Sequence record: LR756511.1
Strand: one strand, 5' to 3'
DNA length: 64,000 nt
Shown here piece after piece: positions 34,189 through 63,954 of the stretch. Every line of letters begins with the position of its first letter. The stretch's first letter is position 1. The notes beneath the pieces were generated by a model. The model ran no database searches. It saw nothing but the letters and a program-made list of their open reading frames with translations, and was not told where the DNA came from. A program made the translations under genes and the position numbers.

Positions 34189-34337
34189 TTTTTTGCAATC
34201 TCCACATTCCAATGACTTTTTCCATTCAAGCCGATCCATTTGTCGCTCCATTTCTTCTTCGGTTATTTGACCGTCTGTGCAGAGCGTAACATAATGGTCT
34301 AGAAGATTTCCTTTTGCGTATTCGTATTCTGTTTTAG

Positions 34338-34430
34338 TGGGCCGTGAGGGTTTCGAACCCCCGACTAAGGGATTATGAATCGCGGGTTGATAAACCCGTG
34401 TCCCCTGCTCTACCACTGAGCTAACGGCCC
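34338..34430 (-). tRNA. tRNA-Ile2 (CAU) with a 21-nt insertion in the anticodon loop
   Basis: GGGCCGT/ACGGCCC acceptor, GCTC/GAGC D stem, GGGGA/TCCCT anticodon stem, TTCGAAA T loop; removing 34379..34399 restores the loop CTCATAA. Confidence 0.85.
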
Positions 34431-48700: not shown

Positions 48701-48720
48701 TTTATTGAATTTTGAGAAAG

Positions 48721-48802
48721 AGCCGCAGGAGGGAATCGAACCCACAATGTCTTTCGACGCAGGTTTACAAAACCTGTCCCTTACCATTCGGGGCACTGCG
48801 GC
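48721..48802 (-). tRNA. tRNA-Thr (UGU) with a long (class II-like) variable arm
   Basis: GCCGCAG/CTGCGGC, CAGGT-TTTGTAA-ACCTG, variable region CGTC-GAAA-GACATT, GTGGG-TTCGATT-CCCTC. Confidence 0.85.
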
Positions 48803-58789: not shown

Positions 58790-59569
58790 TTAATCGTAGA
58801 CGCTAGACCCGCCTCCTGTATTGCCGCCTCTACGCGGTCCAGTCCAGTGAGTGTAGATGTCTCTTGCTTCTGGATCGACACAATGCCTGTAATCCGATGG
58901 AATGTCCGACTTATGCGTAGTATTCATCGCATCTATAATTGCCCTTAACCCTTTGTTGGTAATTCCAGGCAATTTTTCCATCATGCTGCCGCCTGTATGA
59001 TGCACGGCATTGTTTAACCTGTCGATCAGAAAGCCTATATGTTTACCATAATGTATTAGACCTTGTTCGCCAATGCCCTTGCTTGCCCCAATAGCGTTTT
59101 CTATTGTTTGTGCAAGCTGCATATAAAATTCCGATGCATCATTCCATAAGTCATTACGACGCTTCATATCTGAACGATATGTCGTCGTCATAGCTCTAGC
59201 AATCAATTTAGGCTTTTCGTGCGGGGTTGCCTTCTTAATTACTTCGATAGGAATTTCAGGCTTTCCACCTACTAAATCTACTCTCGGAACGCCGCCCTGT
59301 TTAGCATATCTGCCAACATAAGCTCCTGTTCCATAGTATTTCTCTAATTGCTCGATGAAAACCTGTGTGAAAACAGTAACATATAGTTCGCCTATTTCCT
59401 GAATAATAAATACCGCTTTTTGCAGATTCTCTTCAGGAATTTGATCGTTCTGTAACCCTGTATTAATGTAATAGAAGCTACAGATAATATCAGGTGTTAT
59501 TTCTCTAAACCTCTGCCCGCCCCACTCATTAAACAACTGTTGTCCGATAAATGCTTCGAAACTTTTCAT
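58790..59569 (-). CDS. putative head-packaged protein (MKSFEAFI N-terminus)
   Basis: CTS-like start; TAGATA box 4 nt before ATG. Confidence 0.55.
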   Translation of the reverse strand: MKSFEAFIGQQLFNEWGGQRFREITPDIICSFYYINTGLQNDQIPEENLQKAVFIIQEIGELYVTVFTQVFIEQLEKYYGTGAYVGRYAKQGGVPRVDLVGGKPEIPIEVIKKATPHEKPKLIARAMTTTYRSDMKRRNDLWNDASEFYMQLAQTIENAIGASKGIGEQGLIHYGKHIGFLIDRLNNAVHHTGGSMMEKLPGITNKGLRAIIDAMNTTHKSDIPSDYRHCVDPEARDIYTHWTGPRRGGNTGGGSSVYD

Positions 59570-60054
59570 GCATTATCTAAGCATTTATCGGACAACTCTT
59601 TGATACAATTTTTCAGAATTACGGCCAAAGCTTCATCCCCATCCTGCGTATAACCTAATAGCAGCTTTGACTCTTCGATATAATCTTGCGTATACTCAAA
59701 AAAGCCGTTTATTGGTCGATCTAGTCGCTTTCGAATATTGTCAATTCGATCAGCCATCTTGATCTTCTTAGCTTCCTTGGAGGCGTGAATATAGTGAGAA
59801 AAGTCCCTGACACTATTGTTATAAATATCTGGAGGGTTTGTAAGCTCTTTTACGATATCTGTAACCTTATCGCCTATAAATGTCCTTAACACTTCTTCCC
59901 GCAGGCGAGTGTCTTCTAGAATATCGTGAAGGTAGGCAGCGGCTAATTCTTCATCGGTAGGATTATTTAGAAGTTTTGCAACTCGCTCGGCGTGGTCGGC
60001 GCGTGAATTAACTAACAAGGTTCTGGCAATAGACTTAGCTCTTTCAACTAACAT
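59566..60054 (-). CDS. HD-domain hydrolase, MESH1/small alarmone hydrolase-like
   Basis: AAAYLHDILEDT, V.ELT, IKMADRIDNIR. Confidence 0.85.
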   Translation of the reverse strand: MLVERAKSIARTLLVNSRADHAERVAKLLNNPTDEELAAAYLHDILEDTRLREEVLRTFIGDKVTDIVKELTNPPDIYNNSVRDFSHYIHASKEAKKIKMADRIDNIRKRLDRPINGFFEYTQDYIEESKLLLGYTQDGDEALAVILKNCIKELSDKCLDNA

Positions 60055-60398
60055 TAGTTTAAGTCCTGTGGACGGGGTTTCGGGTCAAAAGGTGTCTTTA
60101 ACTTGTACTGGCTCATCAAGTACCCCATGTTGTAAACCGTTGCAAGTAAAGTTTTTAAGTTAGAAACGTCAAAGAAATCAAGTTTTCTTAATGTCGTCAA
60201 ATTGAAAGCAATGCATAGTCCTGTCAGCGGAAGATTTATAATATCATCAGGAACCTTATACCATTTAGCAATTAAGTCCGTTGCCCACATTGCTAAATCG
60301 CTATCGGTTGGCGGATTTTTCGGATCAAAACCATACTCGATATACGCCTTCTCAATAACTTTCATCAACTCGGCAGGAATCTGAGGCATCTGTTCCAT
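60054..60398 (-). CDS. hypothetical protein
   Basis: coupled ORF. Confidence 0.5.
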   Translation of the reverse strand: MEQMPQIPAELMKVIEKAYIEYGFDPKNPPTDSDLAMWATDLIAKWYKVPDDIINLPLTGLCIAFNLTTLRKLDFFDVSNLKTLLATVYNMGYLMSQYKLKTPFDPKPRPQDLN

Positions 60399-60434
60399 TG
60401 TTATGTCCTAAAAGGAACCAAATAATTTTAACAG

Positions 60435-60505
60435 TAGTCCGTATAGGAATCGAACCTATTCTTCAAGCTTAGAAGGCAAACGTGCTTCCATCACACCCAC
60501 GGACC
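60435..60505 (-). tRNA. atypical/degenerate tRNA-Arg (UCU), two mismatches in the anticodon stem
   Basis: GGTCCGT/ACGGACT, GTGT/GCAC, TTTGC-CTTCTAA-GCTTG, ATAGG-TTCGATT-CCTAT. Confidence 0.65.
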
Positions 60506-60603
60506 AACGGCGGGTTTTTTAAAGATGCTTTGCCCGCAGAGCATCAATCCCCTGTCAGCCTGGGTAGGCCATGATTCTACAAGTAGATAGTAGTCCCACT
60601 TAC

Positions 60604-60631
60604 ACTATACTACAAAATTTGCGTTTGTAAA
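60604..60631 (-). promoter_or_regulatory. phage early-type promoter TTTACA-N12-GTAG-TATAGT
   Basis: copy of the recurrent motif, upstream of the atypical tRNA-Arg. Confidence 0.6.
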
Positions 60632-60657
60632 GCGAATTTCTACCGCATACCTATACT

Positions 60658-61449
60658 GTGATTACAATAAAGGACTTCAACCACGGCAGAATAGGAACCC
60701 AGCTATTCAAACTAGCCTTTCTTATAGGAGTTGCAACTAAGAATAACTTAGAATTAGTACTCCCTGAAGATCGTTCATTATTTACTAATTACTTCGTGAA
60801 TAGGTTTCCCTACAAAGAACACGCCTACTCATATTTCTTTAATGAACACGACATTTGCCGATATCACTTTGAAGCATTCCATGCTCCTGACGACACTCTA
60901 TTCCTTGGAAACTACCAAAGCGAATTCTATTTTTCACACTGCAAGGAAGCGGTGCAACACATGATTCAGTTTAAACCAGACATCATGCAAGAAACCAAAC
61001 CTATCATAGACAAACTGAGGAACGACTTTGGCAAACCCCTGGTTGCTGTCCATGTCCGTCGTAGAGACTATCTTTCTGACCCGCGACGGAATCTACAACT
61101 AACAGAAAAACAATATTATCGCAAGGCCATGCGACTATTCCCCGACGCCGCTTTTGTTATTTTCTCAGATGATATGCCTTGGTGTGTTGACTATTTCCAC
61201 AAAAAGTTCCCAAAGGAAATAACCATCTTCTTTAATAAGCGAAATACGGTATCACTTTGCGCAATGTCGCTTTGCGATCATCATATAATCGCTAATAGTG
61301 CATTTAGTTGGTGGGGATCATGGTTATGCAACAATCCATCAAAGAAGATTGTTGCACCTGACCAATGGTATGCAGATTGTGAAGATGCGCCGCAGATGTG
61401 CGAGGAATGGATTAAAATACCATTATCATCGACCGTCACAATGATGTAG
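60658..61449 (+). CDS. alpha-1,2-fucosyltransferase family (GT11)
   Basis: GRIGTQLF, GNYQSE.YF, VHVRRRDY, IFSDD..WC, IIANSAFSWWG. Confidence 0.9.
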   Translation: MITIKDFNHGRIGTQLFKLAFLIGVATKNNLELVLPEDRSLFTNYFVNRFPYKEHAYSYFFNEHDICRYHFEAFHAPDDTLFLGNYQSEFYFSHCKEAVQHMIQFKPDIMQETKPIIDKLRNDFGKPLVAVHVRRRDYLSDPRRNLQLTEKQYYRKAMRLFPDAAFVIFSDDMPWCVDYFHKKFPKEITIFFNKRNTVSLCAMSLCDHHIIANSAFSWWGSWLCNNPSKKIVAPDQWYADCEDAPQMCEEWIKIPLSSTVTMM

Positions 61450-61524
61450 TGGAGCCAGAGGGAATCGAACCCTCCAGTCTACTCTTCCTTTTCGGCTTTA
61501 GAGTAAACTTCTCCGTGTGGCCCC
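61450..61524 (-). ncRNA. tRNA-Ala-identity RNA resembling the tRNA-like domain of tmRNA (no anticodon arm)
   Basis: GGGGCCA/TGGCTCC with G3.U70 and A73, unpaired GG-containing D region, helix TTTACTCT/AGAGTAGA, GAGGG-TTCGATT-CCCTC. Confidence 0.65.
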
Positions 61525-61688
61525 TTCTCAATTAAAGGTTCACGACGTTTGTTAGCATGAAGTCTTCCTTGTTCACAATAAGGACAACTTCCGTGCGGGC
61601 GGCATGTCCTATCGACCTTCTTGCTGGTTTTGCCCATATAAGGCTTTCGCCAGTCTTTTCTGTTCGGATAGTGCTTGTCAAATGCCAT
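61479..61688 (-). CDS. small basic conserved phage protein
   Basis: SKKVDRTCRPHGSCPYC..GRLH; the 3' end runs into the tRNA-like RNA. Confidence 0.55.
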   Translation of the reverse strand: MAFDKHYPNRKDWRKPYMGKTSKKVDRTCRPHGSCPYCEQGRLHANKRREPLIEKGPHGEVYSKAEKEE

Positions 61689-61699
61689 AAATCCTCCAG

Positions 61700-61771
61700 T
61701 ACCCCTACCAGGAATCGAACCTGGACCTTCAATTTAGGAAACTGACGCGATATCCATTTCACCATAGGGGC
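61700..61771 (-). tRNA. tRNA-Arg (CCU)
   Basis: GCCCCTA/TAGGGGT, TCAGT-TTCCTAA-ATTGA. Confidence 0.92.
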
Positions 61772-61772
61772 A

Positions 61773-62072
61773 TTAAATCAAATGCCGAATAACATACTCC
61801 CGCACTTCATCAACGAACTTATCAGACGCATCCCTATATGCACCGTACAGCTCGTCAATTTGGCTTTCTTCCATTCCTTGCCAAAATTCAGGGCAATCCT
61901 CAAAGACGCCCTTCCCAACTCCACCTAATAGATAGTCCAGCAATACACGTTTTTGATTTTTGGTTAACTGAACTTCCATCCTCACCTTCGGAGGGGAGGA
62001 CACAGGAGGACGTGGTTTGGTTCGCTCGTTTTTCCACTCTTCCAAAGCCTTTTGGAAATCTTCATCTGGCAT
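61773..62072 (-). CDS. hypothetical protein
   Basis: start MPDEDF. Confidence 0.45.
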   Translation of the reverse strand: MPDEDFQKALEEWKNERTKPRPPVSSPPKVRMEVQLTKNQKRVLLDYLLGGVGKGVFEDCPEFWQGMEESQIDELYGAYRDASDKFVDEVREYVIRHLI

Positions 62073-62219
62073 AACGTTACTTCCCCACAATAAAATCAGG
62101 TTGAACGTCTTCCAAAATCTCTTTTGCGTCCTGATTCCTTGCATTAAGCAACCAAATAAAGTCTTCCAATGCTTCAAAACTTCTTCGCAATTCGTCTTCC
62201 AAATCGTCTGCCATAACGG

Positions 62220-62951
62220 TCACGACTTATCCTCCAAATAATCCCTAAACTTCTTCAACTTTCTCCAATTCAAAGGATTAAAAAGCATTGAGGCTACAGC
62301 CACATAATCAGCCCCAGCACTCATGTAATCCTTCACATCATTTAATTCTGTAATGCCCCCGCCACCAATTATCTTTACTTCCTTGTATGCCTTCCTTACA
62401 TCCTCTACTGCCCAAAGAGAATATTGTTTCAATACTTTACCGCTTATGCCACCACCAGGAGTAGCTATTGTATTACAAAGATGAAAATGATTAATGCCCA
62501 CATTTTTTAAAGGACGAACAAATTCCATCCAGCGAATCGGGGCTAATTTAGCTATCACATTTTGACCAAAACGCCTACGGGCAATAACAGCCGCTTGTAC
62601 AGCTTCATCAATTATGACCTTGCTCACATTTGGACAAGATAAATTCAATTCTAACGCTAATGGTCTTAACTTGGCGGCTAGTTCTACTAATTGCAACCAC
62701 TCTTGTTTATTAAATCCATGTATGCTTAAAAGCTTATCTGTACTAGTTTTAACTGATTTAATACCAGGATCAGGCAGACCTAATTGGTTTGTCCAAGATT
62801 GAAGACGACGAGAATATCTAACCGTCTTTACAATACGCCAAAATCGCTGTATAAATCCAGTCGGATGTAATGTATAGGTTCCAATTGTTGATGTTACGCC
62901 ACGACAACTAAAATAATTACCGAATGGCGCACTAATAATGATACGGTTCAC
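62220..62951 (-). CDS. pyrD: dihydroorotate dehydrogenase-like (compact class 1)
   Basis: ELNLSCPN, AKLAP, NTI, GGISG, IIGGGGI...D..DY..AGAD. Confidence 0.8.
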   Translation of the reverse strand: MNRIIISAPFGNYFSCRGVTSTIGTYTLHPTGFIQRFWRIVKTVRYSRRLQSWTNQLGLPDPGIKSVKTSTDKLLSIHGFNKQEWLQLVELAAKLRPLALELNLSCPNVSKVIIDEAVQAAVIARRRFGQNVIAKLAPIRWMEFVRPLKNVGINHFHLCNTIATPGGGISGKVLKQYSLWAVEDVRKAYKEVKIIGGGGITELNDVKDYMSAGADYVAVASMLFNPLNWRKLKKFRDYLEDKS

Positions 62952-63119
62952 TCTGAATCAGTAAACAAATTCGCAAGAATTTGGTCAATAATAAACGTGT
63001 CTGTGATGATGTAGGCAAGCCCAGCTATCACCGCTACTTCAAATCCAAAGAAATACTTAATTCCCAAAAGAATAAGTATGTTAAAAAGCAGAATACAAAA
63101 TCTTGCTAAAAGCATTGTT

Positions 63120-63536
63120 TTATCCTAATAACCATTGCACGCCGACTATCTTCTCAAGAAATACCTGACAACTCAAGATCAAAGTGCAAGCGTGAACCAA
63201 TTGATCGAACCCCAATGTCACGAAGAACAAATACAATAACTGCCTTTTGTAAAAAAAGGAAGTGATCTTACTGGTAATTGCATCCGTTATTATGTGCGCA
63301 ACAATATTGAACGCCACAAACATCACAAATATCGAAAGTGGCACGGATTCTGGCATTACTACATACATGCCAGTCGTAAACACTGTGGCGTAAGCTAATC
63401 CGTGGGCAAGAAGTGCTAGTTGATTATGGCTTTTGTTGTTCGCCATCCAGCGGATTTGGCACACGAAATCTGCTATAAAATGAAGCACTAGCAAGTAATA
63501 TATCATGGTTGCCACATAATCGTAATCTGATCGCAA
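63120..63536 (-). CDS. DUF3307 family membrane protein
   Basis: HFIADFVCQ..WMA..K, HG..Y, H.ITD, GFDQLVH. Confidence 0.85.
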   Translation of the reverse strand: MRSDYDYVATMIYYLLVLHFIADFVCQIRWMANNKSHNQLALLAHGLAYATVFTTGMYVVMPESVPLSIFVMFVAFNIVAHIITDAITSKITSFFYKRQLLYLFFVTLGFDQLVHACTLILSCQVFLEKIVGVQWLLG

Positions 63537-63669
63537 GCTTCATCGAAGGTAAGCGGTTTATCGAAATCTTTCTTGATAAAGTTTTTACCTTCTGGCGGCT
63601 CTCTGCTGAATATCCATGCATCACCGTCTTGCCAGTAATAAACACTTGTAATTAACTCTTCATCCATAG

Positions 63670-63742
63670 TGGGCGCTAAGGGATTCGAACCCCTGACTTC
63701 TTGCGTGTAAGGCAAGCACTCTAGCCGCTGAGTTAAGCGCCC
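63670..63742 (-). tRNA. tRNA-Val (UAC)
   Basis: GGGCGCT/AGCGCCC, CTTGC-CTTACAC-GCAAG. Confidence 0.95.
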
Positions 63743-63954
63743 TATAAACTTTCCAACAAATGTCTCGGTGTTAAAGCCTTTGTGTCATATACGAATTTTC
63801 CATCCACTTCTTTCAAATGCCGTTTAGCGTGGCAATTAAAACAAACTATTTCTAAGTTATCCCAACTATTATTGTGTGGGTTTCCATCCTTGTGATGGAT
63901 CGTCAATAAAAATTCTAAATTATTTTCACATCCGACACAAATCTTTTTACTCAC
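63742..63954 (-). CDS. small HNH endonuclease
   Basis: CVGC...LTIHHKDGNPHNN.WDNLEIVCFNCH. Confidence 0.8.
   Translation of the reverse strand: MSKKICVGCENNLEFLLTIHHKDGNPHNNSWDNLEIVCFNCHAKRHLKEVDGKFVYDTKALTPRHLLESL

What the first reader, a model, noticed from the sequence alone, without database searches (positions are those of the whole stretch)
61450..61524. 75-nt RNA that looks like only the tRNA-like domain of tmRNA
Seen: an Ala acceptor stem with G3.U70 and A73, a stemless GG-containing D region (CACGGAGAAG), an 8-10 bp helix (61500..61507 with 61478..61485) capped by a 14-nt loop, a 3-nt linker and a perfect T arm. There is no anticodon arm. This is the tmRNA TLD layout without pseudoknots or a tag ORF; mRNA-less tmRNAs are known from some protist mitochondria. 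The upstream ORF reads into it and stops at a TAG within the helix. Inference: an alanylatable SmpB-binding RNA that releases stalled ribosomes without tagging, or titrates SmpB to block trans-translation.
Basis: partly seen in the sequence, partly recalled or inferred. Interest (0 to 1): 0.75.

Follow-up and report, generated by a model that had tools for sequence, protein, structure and literature searches.

The report
Tag-less mini-tmRNA in a huge phage
A 75-base RNA gene in a 595-kb phage has only the alanine-accepting, tRNA-like end of the ribosome-rescue RNA tmRNA; it belongs to a widespread, largely unannotated phage family with one published member, which probably interferes with or shortcuts the host's rescue-and-tagging system.

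Summary
On the minus strand at 61450-61524 there is a 7-bp acceptor stem with G3.U70 and A73, a stemless GG-containing D region, an 8-10 bp helix with a 14-nt loop, and a perfect T arm. There is no anticodon arm and no reading frame.

ARAGORN and Rfam do not call it. It is nevertheless not an oddity. About 90 distinct 75-86-nt RNAs with the same layout occur in viral contigs, and 82 cultured Streptomyces phage records carry an unannotated copy. The one published 'TLD-only' phage tmRNA, from mycobacteriophage DS6A, belongs to the same family.

The family's helices covary strongly, and G1-C72, G2-C71, G3.U70 and A73 never change. A covariance model trained without this element or its closest subgroup scores it 51.8 bits, against 40 or less for tRNA-Ala controls.

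The same phage also encodes a normal tRNA-Ala and a full-length tmRNA, so the element is not a decayed copy of either.

The most likely function is inferred, not shown. The RNA is charged with alanine and competes with tmRNA for host SmpB and stalled ribosomes, which blocks or bypasses degradation tagging.

It is a new, divergent variant of a known but barely described kind.

The parts
61450..61524 (-). The whole 75-nt TLD-only mini-tmRNA gene. CCA is not encoded; the bases after A73 are CUA.
   Evidence: Sequence; fold; R1 47.9, R2 56.5 and R3 51.8 bits
61518..61524 (-). Acceptor stem, 5' strand GGGGCCA (nt 1-7)
   Evidence: Pairs 7/7 with 61451-61457. G3.U70 is the alanine identity pair and is invariant in 74/74 homologs.
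61508..61517 (-). Stemless D-region analogue CACGGAGAAG (nt 8-17) containing GG
   Evidence: Unpaired in the minimum-energy fold except its last two bases. The GG aligns with the family's conserved GG.
61500..61507 (-). Long helix (tmRNA H2a analogue), 5' strand UUUACUCU (nt 18-25)
   Evidence: Pairs with 61478-61485. The equivalent helix covaries at all 8 pairs in the family.
61486..61499 (-). 14-nt loop AAAGCCGAAAAGGA with the family motif AAAGCC-N-GGA, including a small CC/GG hairpin
   Evidence: The motif is already the consensus of models built without this element (R1 consensus uAaaaCCGcauGcgGaag; R2 consensus aAAAgCCGcaaguGGAa).
61478..61485 (-). Long helix, 3' strand AGAGUAGA (nt 40-47). 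It contains the TAG stop of the overlapping ORF.
61475..61477 (-). Linker CUG (nt 48-50). It occupies the place of the canonical GGAC.
   Evidence: Only 23/74 family members have GGAC here.
61458..61474 (-). T arm GAGGG UUCGAUU CCCUC (nt 51-67)
   Evidence: 5/5 pairs with a canonical T loop. The same GAGGG/CCCUC stem occurs in most of the closest subgroup, although the search pattern did not select for it.
61450..61457 (-). Acceptor stem, 3' strand UGGCUCC (nt 68-74), plus discriminator A73 at 61450
   Evidence: A73 is present in 77/77 family sequences.
61479..61688 (-). 69-aa ORF for a small Cys-rich protein, with a GGAGGA Shine-Dalgarno 3 nt before its ATG. Its last 15 codons and its stop lie inside the RNA gene.
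   Evidence: A relative in L120 matches only residues 22-50 and ends soon after, without any RNA overlap. No Pfam or PHROG family.
61699..61771 (-). tRNA-Arg(CCU) just upstream on the same strand. It is probably part of the same transcript, so the element would be released by tRNA-processing enzymes.
   Evidence: No promoter or terminator lies between the two genes.
60658..61449 (+). Convergent glycosyltransferase family 11 gene. Its TAG stop ends one base before the 3' end of the RNA.
   Evidence: Pfam PF01531 1.5e-20; phrog_2644

Best explanation
The element is a phage-encoded, tag-less mini-tmRNA. It keeps only the tRNA-like domain (TLD) of tmRNA: the acceptor stem, the T arm, a stemless D loop and the first helix, closed by a short conserved loop. 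It is a divergent member of the family that includes the 'TLD only' tmRNA of mycobacteriophage DS6A.

Proposed working, with each step marked as shown or inferred:
1. It is transcribed with the neighbouring tRNA genes and cut out by RNase P and 3' processing, and CCA is added afterwards. This is inferred from its position, its strand and the lack of an encoded CCA, features it shares with this phage's own tRNA-Ala and tmRNA.
2. Host AlaRS charges it with alanine. This is inferred from established knowledge that G3.U70 plus A73 are sufficient identity elements, and from their invariance in every homolog.
3. Together with host SmpB and EF-Tu it competes with full-length tmRNA for stalled ribosomes. 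The nascent chain then receives one alanine instead of a degradation tag, and SmpB is drawn away from tmRNA. This is inferred. It is supported by the report that a similar TLD molecule strongly inhibits tmRNA in E. coli.
4. It has no reading frame and no stop codon, so final release must depend on other factors: drop-off followed by peptidyl-tRNA hydrolase, ArfA/ArfB, or a second round with full tmRNA. This is inferred.

My confidence by step:
- Identity as a TLD-only tmRNA family member: about 0.9.
- Alanylation: about 0.8.
- Action through SmpB and stalled ribosomes: about 0.5.
For: **Anatomy.** The layout was read directly and is the predicted fold.

**Not a tRNA.** ARAGORN and the Rfam tRNA model find nothing.

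**A real family.**
- About 90 distinct 75-86-nt viral sequences share the layout (scripts 23, 37, 41, 42).
- In 74 aligned members, 97.4% of cells are paired, against 64% after shuffling and about 50% after sliding the partners. All 8 long-helix pairs, 4 acceptor pairs and 3 T-stem pairs show compensatory changes. G1-C72, G2-C71 and G3.U70 are invariant. A73 is invariant in 77/77.

**Link to tmRNA.**
- Rfam RF00023 accepts ten members at 47.5-67 bits.
- The DS6A TLD-only tmRNA (JN698994 28478-28557) scores 62.6 bits on the family model.

**Membership of this element.**
- R2, built without it, gives 56.5 bits. That is the best hit in 941 kb; tRNA-Ala controls with the same T arm and acceptor reach at most 42.3.
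- R3 was built only from canonical members plus DS6A, leaving out this element and its whole subgroup. It gives 51.8 bits, against 53-73 for the held-out subgroup and 40 or less for tRNA-Ala.

**Independent homolog.** An untargeted blastn led to an unannotated RNA between tRNA-Val and tRNA-Leu in Streptomyces phage Jay2Jay. It has the same D-region and loop motifs and a compensated acceptor stem and helix. That RNA is conserved in 82 phage records.

**Not decay of another gene.** The same phage has a normal tRNA-Ala(UGC) 2.8 kb away and a 353-nt tmRNA with tag ANPEFAMAA. That tmRNA's acceptor stem and T arm differ from the mini's.

**Functional precedent.** PMC4131195 and PMC11915505 cite Mao et al. 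2009.
Against: - No experiment or transcript data is available for this phage.
- Rfam's tmRNA model gives only 13.8 bits.
- The element lacks the canonical UCGAC in the D region and GGAC before the T stem. These form the tandem G.A pairs beside helix 2a, near where SmpB binds. Only 38/74 and 23/74 family members carry them, so they are not family-defining, but SmpB binding of this variant is unproven.
- Its inner hairpin is one base shorter than in relatives (2 bp instead of 3).
- No close relative of this particular phage was found, so selection on this exact copy cannot be measured.
- The phage carries its own full tmRNA, as do the Streptomyces phages. That sits awkwardly with a pure 'inhibit trans-translation' role.
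- The reported inhibition in E. coli did not need alanylation (PMC4131195), whereas the family conserves the alanine identity set strictly. The real mechanism may therefore differ from simple titration.
- Part of the family was collected with sequence patterns taken from this element (ascertainment bias). R1 could not separate it from tRNA-Ala: 47.9 against 45 bits.
Confidence: 0.5

Rival explanations
1. A pure SmpB sponge. The RNA binds host SmpB (charged or not) and never needs to enter the ribosome. Its only effect is to lower trans-translation by host tmRNA.
For: [quoted passage not shown] 2009; repeated in PMC11915505). No SmpB gene was found in the phage (tblastn E >= 3.8), so host SmpB would be the target.
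Against: G3.U70, A73 and the first two acceptor pairs are invariant in all 74-77 homologs. A sponge that need not be charged would not require this. The phage, and the Streptomyces phages, also encode a full tmRNA that needs the same SmpB. This variant lacks the canonical UCGAC/GGAC motifs.
Confidence: 0.2
2. An alanine-accepting tRNA-like RNA that works outside trans-translation. It could be an Ala donor for a tRNA-dependent transferase, or a decoy or protective substrate for tRNA-directed host nucleases or tRNA-processing enzymes within the phage's tRNA module.
For: It lies in a tRNA-rich stretch on the same strand as 10 tRNA genes. Of 74 homologs, 26 are within 1 kb of tRNA genes, always on the same strand. 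The closest subgroup lacks canonical tmRNA D-region motifs and falls below Rfam's tmRNA threshold. The Streptomyces phages that carry it also carry Ro, RNA ligase and polynucleotide kinase genes.
Against: The family runs continuously into members that Rfam accepts as tmRNA, and into DS6A. No protein gene is a conserved neighbour; the commonest flanking family occurs in 7 of 76 loci. Forty-seven of 74 homologs have no tRNA gene in the fetched locus.
Confidence: 0.15
3. A non-functional relic: a decaying copy of a mini-tmRNA or of tRNA-Ala, kept by chance, or a leftover of an integration site in an ssrA or tRNA gene.
For: It is a singleton with no close relative. The inner hairpin is shortened and the D region is atypical. 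A protein ORF has extended into it. No standard tool calls it.
Against: All 22 pairs of the three helices are intact (7/7, 10/10, 5/5), and the T loop, the GG, G3.U70 and A73 are all preserved. A relic would have accumulated mismatches. Both halves of the acceptor stem are present, so it is not a 3' att fragment. The comparable atypical variant is conserved in 82 Streptomyces phage records, with compensatory changes in the helix. Intact tRNA-Ala and tmRNA genes elsewhere have different sequences.
Confidence: 0.1

Closest known systems
'TLD only' tmRNA of mycobacteriophage DS6A (tmRNA Website id 11587; Mao et al. 2009, as cited in PMC4131195 and PMC11915505)
   Same: - It is phage-encoded and 80 nt long.
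- It has a GGGGCCG acceptor stem with G3.U70 and A73, a stemless D loop with GG, one helix, the loop GAAAACCGCACGCGG, and a T arm with UUCGAUU.
- It has no pseudoknots and no tag ORF.
- I located it at JN698994 28478-28557, where it is unannotated. It scores 62.6 bits on the same family model that scores our element 56.5.
   Different: - DS6A keeps the canonical GGUCGAC in the D region and a 3-bp inner hairpin. Ours has CACGGAGAAG, a CUG linker and a 2-bp inner hairpin.
- DS6A is a 60-kb temperate phage with no tRNA array and, as annotated, no full-length tmRNA.
- Ours sits among tRNA genes in a 595-kb phage that also has a full tmRNA.
Standard one-piece tmRNA (Rfam RF00023), including the full-length tmRNAs of this phage and of Streptomyces BE phages
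   Same: - The acceptor stem carries the alanine identity set.
- The T arm is present and the D loop is reduced and stemless.
- A helix leaves the TLD where a long variable arm would be (PMC3968760).
- Several members of the mini family reach RF00023's gathering score.
   Different: About 280-300 nt are missing: the pseudoknots, the mRNA-like domain, the resume codon and the stop codons. Our element scores 13.8 bits against a threshold of 47. It cannot add a tag or terminate on its own template.
CDS-less organellar tmRNAs: mitochondrial mt-tmRNA of jakobids and oomycetes (RF02544) and the ~65-bp plastid forms (PMC11915505, PMC3590771)
   Same: They are reduced to the tRNA-like domain and have no tag reading frame. 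They are presumed still to act with SmpB.
   Different: They arose by organelle reduction of the resident ssrA gene, are usually circularly permuted, and are the only tmRNA in their compartment. Ours is an extra, non-permuted viral gene beside a full tmRNA. This is convergent reduction, not the same lineage.
tRNA-Ala
   Same: It shares the acceptor stem identity (G3.U70, A73), the T arm and almost the same length (75 nt). The gene sits in a tRNA array, and CCA is not encoded.
   Different: Ours has no D stem, no anticodon arm and no anticodon. Neither ARAGORN nor the Rfam tRNA model calls it. The phage's real tRNA-Ala(UGC) is a separate gene.

Membership tests
Phage TLD-only (CDS-less) mini-tmRNA, DS6A type | A 75-86-nt RNA with this layout: 7-bp acceptor stem, unpaired GG-containing D region, a single 7-10 bp helix, a short closing loop, a short linker, and a 5-bp T arm abutting the acceptor 3' strand | tested here: met
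   Direct reading and minimum-energy fold. The same layout appears in 74 aligned homologs and in DS6A.
Phage TLD-only (CDS-less) mini-tmRNA, DS6A type | Scores on a family covariance model above tRNA-Ala genes that share its T arm and acceptor sequence | tested here: met
   R2: 56.5 against at most 42.3 bits. R3, with the element's whole subgroup held out: 51.8 against at most 40.5 bits. R1, the first and narrowest model, did not discriminate: 47.9 against 45.0.
Phage TLD-only (CDS-less) mini-tmRNA, DS6A type | Invariant alanine identity set: G1-C72, G2-C71, G3.U70, A73 | tested here: met
   Present in the element. Invariant in 74/74 and 77/77 homologs.
Phage TLD-only (CDS-less) mini-tmRNA, DS6A type | Conserved loop motif A-rich + GCC - short hairpin - GGA | tested here: met
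   The loop is AAAGCCGAAAAGGA. The motif was already the consensus of R1, which was built from sequences not selected on the loop. Its hairpin is 1 nt shorter than in the closest subgroup.
Phage TLD-only (CDS-less) mini-tmRNA, DS6A type | Encoded by viruses, not by cellular chromosomes | tested here: met
   The window is the 595-kb phage LR756511.1. The subgroup pattern finds 24 viral loci. It gives 20 pattern hits in 185,579 bacterial and archaeal species genomes, none of which matches the model.
Phage TLD-only (CDS-less) mini-tmRNA, DS6A type | Binds SmpB and inhibits or replaces tmRNA function | not testable with these tools
   Only literature on a similar molecule is available (PMC4131195, PMC11915505). 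The canonical UCGAC/GGAC motifs are absent here.
Standard tmRNA (Rfam RF00023) | tRNA-like domain with an alanine acceptor stem, a T arm and a stemless D loop | tested here: met
   Features as described in PMC3968760.
Standard tmRNA (Rfam RF00023) | mRNA-like domain with resume codon, tag ORF and stop codons, plus pseudoknots | tested here: not met
   Only 14 nt lie between the two strands of the helix. ARAGORN's tmRNA mode finds nothing.
Standard tmRNA (Rfam RF00023) | Reaches the curated gathering score of 47 bits | tested here: not met
   13.8 bits, as a truncated match.
Standard tmRNA (Rfam RF00023) | Conserved UUCGAC in the D loop and GGAC before the T stem (tandem G.A next to helix 2a) | tested here: not met
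   The element has CACGGAGAAG and CUG. Many family members also lack these motifs.
tRNA-Ala (Rfam RF00005) | Cloverleaf with a D stem, an anticodon arm and an alanine anticodon | tested here: not met
   No call by ARAGORN in standard, low-threshold, intron or mitochondrial modes, nor by Rfam. nt 27-43 cannot form an anticodon stem.
Mitochondrial mt-tmRNA (Rfam RF02544) | Organellar, usually circularly permuted ssrA reduced to the TLD | tested here: not met
   The gene is viral and not permuted. No RF02544 match was reported. Lower-scoring matches from the same clan were hidden, so the score itself is unknown.

The most novel reading that the evidence does not exclude
Tag-less mini-tmRNAs may be a widespread, phage-specific class of translation-control RNA with its own conserved loop module. 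Charged with alanine, they would divert stalled ribosomes from the host's tag-and-destroy pathway into tag-free rescue, adding one Ala. This would protect phage proteins when host nucleases or defence toxins truncate mRNAs. In large phages they would work alongside a phage-encoded full-length tmRNA, in a division of labour that is not yet understood. A stop triplet straddles the helix end and the loop in 46 of 72 members. This could mean that some members even present a stop codon as their only 'message'.
Probability: 0.25. Interest if true: 0.75.

Novelty: new variant of a known kind. Interest (0 to 1): 0.6.

Why it matters
Trans-translation by tmRNA and SmpB is the main ribosome-rescue and quality-control system of bacteria. 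How phages handle it is poorly known.

A tmRNA reduced to its tRNA-like end has been reported for a single phage, DS6A. The latest tmRNA database lists only 9 'standard, no CDS' sequences among 97,179 (PMC11915505).

This finding led to about 90 distinct viral members. It also showed an unannotated copy in 82 records of cultured Streptomyces phages that grow on laboratory strains. The family's strictly conserved alanine identity suggests the RNA must be charged. The mini coexists with a full-length phage tmRNA in at least two unrelated phage lineages.

Three consequences follow:
- The function of tag-less tmRNAs becomes testable in a tractable system. The same open question applies to jakobid and oomycete mitochondria.
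- Standard annotation tools (ARAGORN, tRNAscan-type tools, Rfam thresholds) systematically miss these genes.
- The element is one more piece of the translation take-over kit of huge phages.

Tried and rejected
- **Standard RNA finders.** ARAGORN was run in tRNA, tmRNA, intron, low-threshold and mitochondrial modes, and Rfam at gathering score. None calls the element.
- **First family model, R1.** It scored the element 47.9 bits, but ordinary tRNA-Ala with the same T arm scored up to 45. I rejected it as a discriminating test and replaced it with R2 and R3.
- **Close relatives of this phage.** I searched with the 69-aa protein and the glycosyltransferase in viral contigs, blastn of the 1.2-kb region against phages, and two metagenome scans with element-specific patterns. 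No relative with the element turned up.
- **Bacterial genomes.** Scanning with the subgroup pattern gave 20 hits, none matching the family model.
- **MAFFT alignment of 68 members (A2).** It staggered the 5' ends and was discarded for pair counting. Model-based alignments were used instead.
- **'The loop carries a stop codon that serves as resume codon.'** Enriched (46/72) but not universal, and the U is base-paired. Not adopted.
- **'The mini is a recent internal deletion of the phage's own tmRNA.'** Rejected: the acceptor stem and T arm differ.
- **'It is the phage's only tRNA-Ala, gone odd.'** Rejected: a normal tRNA-Ala(UGC) lies 2.8 kb away.
- **'TAG is recoded, so the overlapping ORF reads on.'** Rejected: treating TAG as sense lengthens ORFs no more than doing the same for TGA or TAA.
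- **Phage-encoded SmpB.** Not found by tblastn with E. coli SmpB. This is a weak negative.
- **A conserved protein neighbour that could be a partner.** None found.
- **Promoter and terminator scan.** Nothing above the shuffled expectation.
- **Homology of the loop to a defined tmRNA region.** Rfam treats the loop as an insertion. The GAAAGC that follows helix 2a in the Jay2Jay full tmRNA is only suggestive.
Full report
**1. What is there**

The window is part of LR756511.1, an unannotated 595,163-bp 'uncultured phage' genome. Window position 1 is record position 186,001.

- a 7/7 acceptor stem with G3.U70 and A73;
- an unpaired 10-nt D region containing GG;
- an 8-bp helix (61500-61507 with 61478-61485), extendable to 10 bp;
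- a 14-nt loop and a 3-nt linker;
- a perfect T arm with a canonical UUCGAUU loop.

This is the predicted minimum-energy fold: -31.6 kcal/mol, z = -3.2, and none of 200 shuffles folds as well.

The 69-aa ORF at 61479-61688 (-) runs into the element and stops at a TAG inside the 3' strand of the helix.

No anticodon arm can be drawn. ARAGORN in every mode, and Rfam at gathering score, call neither a tRNA nor a tmRNA here. The only sub-threshold match is a truncated tmRNA alignment of 13.8 bits against a threshold of 47.

**2. It has many relatives**

A scan of viral contigs for the element's T arm plus acceptor 3' strand returned tRNA-Ala genes and true tmRNAs. It also returned a set of 77-86-nt RNAs with a different layout:
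- an acceptor stem such as GGGGCCG;
- a D loop such as GAAUGGUUUCGAC;
- one 5-9 bp helix;
- a loop such as UAAGACCGCAUGCGGAG;
- GGAC, a T arm and the acceptor 3' strand.

Rfam's tmRNA model accepts six of these at 48-67 bits, treating the roughly 300 missing nucleotides as a deletion.

Further pattern scans brought the collection to about 90 distinct sequences (scripts 23, 37, 41, 42). Four more of them reach the Rfam tmRNA threshold.

An untargeted blastn of the element against GenBank phages hit an unannotated gap between tRNA-Val and tRNA-Leu in Streptomyces phage Jay2Jay. That sequence is GGGUUUG ACGGGUGUAAG GUUACUG AAAGCCGACAAUGGAC CGGUAAC UGUA GAGGG UUCGAUU CCCUC CAAAUCC A. Its layout is the same. 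Its D-region motif (ACGG.G.AAG) and loop motif (AAAGCCGA..GGA) match ours. G3.U70 and A73 are kept, and the acceptor stem and long helix are fully compensated.

This RNA is conserved at 84-100% identity in 82 Streptomyces phage records. None of the 40 records listed has an annotation under the match.

**3. The family is a real structured RNA**

I aligned 74 members, one per locus and excluding ours, to a covariance model. The pair counts are as follows:
- 97.4% of cells are standard pairs, against 64% when partners are shuffled and 43-52% when partners are slid by 1-3 columns.
- All 8 long-helix pairs, 4 of 7 acceptor pairs and 3 of 5 T-stem pairs show changes on both sides.
- G1-C72, G2-C71 and G3.U70 never vary.

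A73 is present in 77/77 sequences.

Two caveats apply. The alignment is fitted to the structure, and full acceptor pairing was a collection criterion. T-stem pairing, long-helix pairing, U70 and A73 were not selected for.

Within the closely related Streptomyces phages alone, the helix changes by double substitutions: GUUACUG/CGGUAAC, GUCAGUG/CGCUGAC, GUUACGG/CCGUAGC.

**4. Does this element belong?**

It scored ours 47.9 bits, but ordinary tRNA-Ala genes with the same T arm scored up to 45. It is not a valid discriminator.

| Model | Training set | This element | Comparison scores |
|---|---|---|---|
| R2 | 74 members with diverse acceptor stems, ours excluded | 56.5 bits (E 7e-11), top hit of 941 kb | tRNA-Ala controls at most 42.3 |
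| R3 | 60 canonical members plus DS6A; ours and its whole divergent subgroup held out | 51.8 bits | held-out subgroup 53-73; tRNA-Ala at most 40 |

The loop motif was already the consensus of R1, whose members were not chosen on their loops. The GAGGG/CCCUC T stem that ours shares with its subgroup was not part of any search pattern.

I conclude that the element is a divergent member of this family (confidence about 0.9).

**5. Relation to what is known**

The literature held here names one such phage RNA. [quoted passage not shown] 2009; repeated in PMC11915505).

I located the DS6A RNA at JN698994 28478-28557, in an unannotated gap. It scores 62.6 bits on R2 and has the family layout and loop. 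The known DS6A RNA and our element therefore belong to one family.

The current tmRNA database lists only 9 'standard, no CDS' sequences out of 97,179. My full-text searches found no description of a broad phage family.

They arose by organelle reduction and are usually permuted. They are not the same lineage.

**6. Context in this phage**

ARAGORN on the whole record finds the following:
- 62 tRNA genes, nearly all on the minus strand;
- a normal tRNA-Ala(UGC) at 250311-250384, 2.8 kb from the element;
- an amber-suppressor-like tRNA(CUA);
- a 353-nt full-length tmRNA at 341280-341632 with tag ANPEFAMAA.

The full tmRNA has a different acceptor stem (GGGGGCG) and T arm (UUGGG UUCAAUU CCCAA). 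The mini is therefore not a recent deletion derivative of it.

Neither the tRNA-Ala, the tmRNA nor the mini encodes CCA; each has C after A73.

No SmpB homolog was detected with E. coli SmpB as query. This is a weak negative.

Jay2Jay likewise has an annotated 283-nt tmRNA and three tRNA-Ala genes besides its mini. A mini and a full tmRNA thus coexist in two unrelated phage lineages.

Across the family:
- 26 of 74 minis lie within 1 kb of tRNA genes, always on the same strand. The rest stand alone, as in DS6A.
- No protein gene is a conserved neighbour.
- The subgroup pattern occurs in 24 viral loci. Its 20 hits in 185,579 bacterial and archaeal genomes are not family members.

**7. How it most likely works**

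Shown:
- the structure;
- family membership;
- the invariant alanine identity set;
- the absence of any template.

Established knowledge:
- G3.U70 with A73 suffices for AlaRS.
- The TLD is the part of tmRNA that is processed by RNase P, charged, bound by EF-Tu and bound at its elbow by SmpB.
- Helix 2 projects like a long variable arm (PMC3968760).

Inference: the RNA is processed out of the tRNA transcript, receives CCA and is alanylated. With host SmpB and EF-Tu it competes with tmRNA at stalled ribosomes.

A sponge would not need to be charged, yet the identity set is invariant. I therefore favour actual entry into the ribosome and transfer of the nascent chain to Ala-mini. The product would carry one Ala instead of a degradation tag.

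Release would then need other factors: drop-off with Pth, ArfA/ArfB, or a second round with full tmRNA.

A pure SmpB sponge is the main rival. A role outside trans-translation and a non-functional relic are less likely. The relic reading fits poorly with 22 of 22 intact helix pairs.

The main weakness is that ours and the BE1-type Streptomyces copies lack the canonical UCGAC...GGAC, the tandem G.A pairs next to helix 2a. BE2-type copies keep GUGAC...GGAU. Only 38/74 and 23/74 family members have the canonical forms. The motifs are therefore not family-defining, but SmpB binding must be tested.

**8. The overlapping ORF**

The 69-aa ORF has a strong Shine-Dalgarno (GGAGGA, 3 nt, ATG) directly after tRNA-Arg(CCU). 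It has a relative in a viral contig that matches only residues 22-50 and ends about 15 residues later, with no RNA downstream.

The last 15 codons and the stop codon of our ORF lie inside the RNA gene. If RNase P cuts at G1, the ORF's mRNA loses its stop codon and becomes a non-stop message. A similar arrangement was noted for smpB-ssrA in Carsonella (PMC4131195). This is an inference worth one mapping experiment.

TAG is not recoded in this phage.

**9. Verdict**

The interpretation of identity is supported. The function is plausible but untested.

The element is a new, divergent variant of a known but almost undescribed kind. The wider result is a large, phage-specific, mostly unannotated family that is testable in cultured Streptomyces phages. 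That is what gives the finding its interest, which I score at 0.6.

Noticed in passing
L346 41381-41733 (LR756511.1 341280-341632, minus strand): The same phage encodes a full-length 353-nt tmRNA with tag ANPEFAMAA and two stop codons. Its acceptor stem and T arm differ from those of the mini.
   Followed up: partly
L344 29588-29661 (LR756511.1 179588-179661, minus strand): A tRNA with anticodon CUA (amber-suppressor type; ARAGORN labels it Pyl). ORF statistics give no sign that TAG is recoded genome-wide, so its role is open.
   Followed up: partly
L345 40715-40790 (LR756511.1 290614-290689, minus strand): ARAGORN reports a tRNA with a four-base anticodon (gaaa). It could be a frameshift-type or aberrant tRNA.
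   Followed up: no
window 34337-34430 and 48720-48802 (minus strand): tRNA-Pro(CGG) is 94 nt and tRNA-Thr(UGU) is 83 nt, longer than normal for these types. They may carry insertions or introns.
   Followed up: no
window 61498-61500 (minus strand) and alignment A5: A UAA/UAG/UGA triplet straddles the end of the long helix and the A-run of the loop in 46 of 72 family members, ours included (UAA). About 31% would be expected by chance. It is not universal and is unexplained.
   Followed up: partly
L206 1486-1562 = NC_029098.1 87504-87580; also 82 Streptomyces phage records: Cluster BE Streptomyces phages carry an unannotated mini-tmRNA in their tRNA array. This is in addition to the one tmRNA their genome announcements report.
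   Followed up: yes
L353 28478-28557 (JN698994, between gp33 and gp34): The published DS6A TLD-only tmRNA is not annotated in the GenBank record.
   Followed up: yes
L326 498-626 (Streptomyces phage Mildred21 98558-98686): A 129-nt feature annotated 'tRNA-OTHER' has a tRNA-like acceptor stem (GGCCCCA/UGGGGUC, without G3.U70), a T arm GAGGG UUCGAAU CCCUC and a long internal insertion. Its nature is unknown.
   Followed up: no
L352 5083-6732, 23905-25005, 25552-26451 (Jay2Jay): The tRNA region of the Streptomyces phages also encodes a Ro-like RNA-binding protein, a T4-like RNA ligase and a polynucleotide kinase. Together these look like an RNA repair and quality-control module around the tRNA, tmRNA and mini-tmRNA genes.
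   Followed up: no
L073 558-630; L055 174-243: Two further viral RNAs have an alanine acceptor stem and a T arm but a different middle part, with no AAAGCC loop. They score 46-48 and 40-42 bits on the family models and may be other reduced TLD variants.
   Followed up: no
L026, L039, L052, L057, L059, L062, L076, L083, L119 (3' ends listed): A recurrent viral sequence ...UUGGUAUUGUUGAUAUUGGAUAGAAAUGCGAACAGCACAGGGGUUCGAUUCCCCUCGGCUCCAUU looks like a tmRNA 3' end, but ARAGORN did not call it in the extracted stretch.
   Followed up: no
window 58790-63954: Genes near the element: an HD-domain protein (59566-60054), a glycosyltransferase family 11 gene (60658-61449), a dihydroorotate-dehydrogenase-like protein (62220-62951), a DUF3307 membrane protein (63120-63536) and a small HNH endonuclease (63742-63954).
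   Followed up: partly
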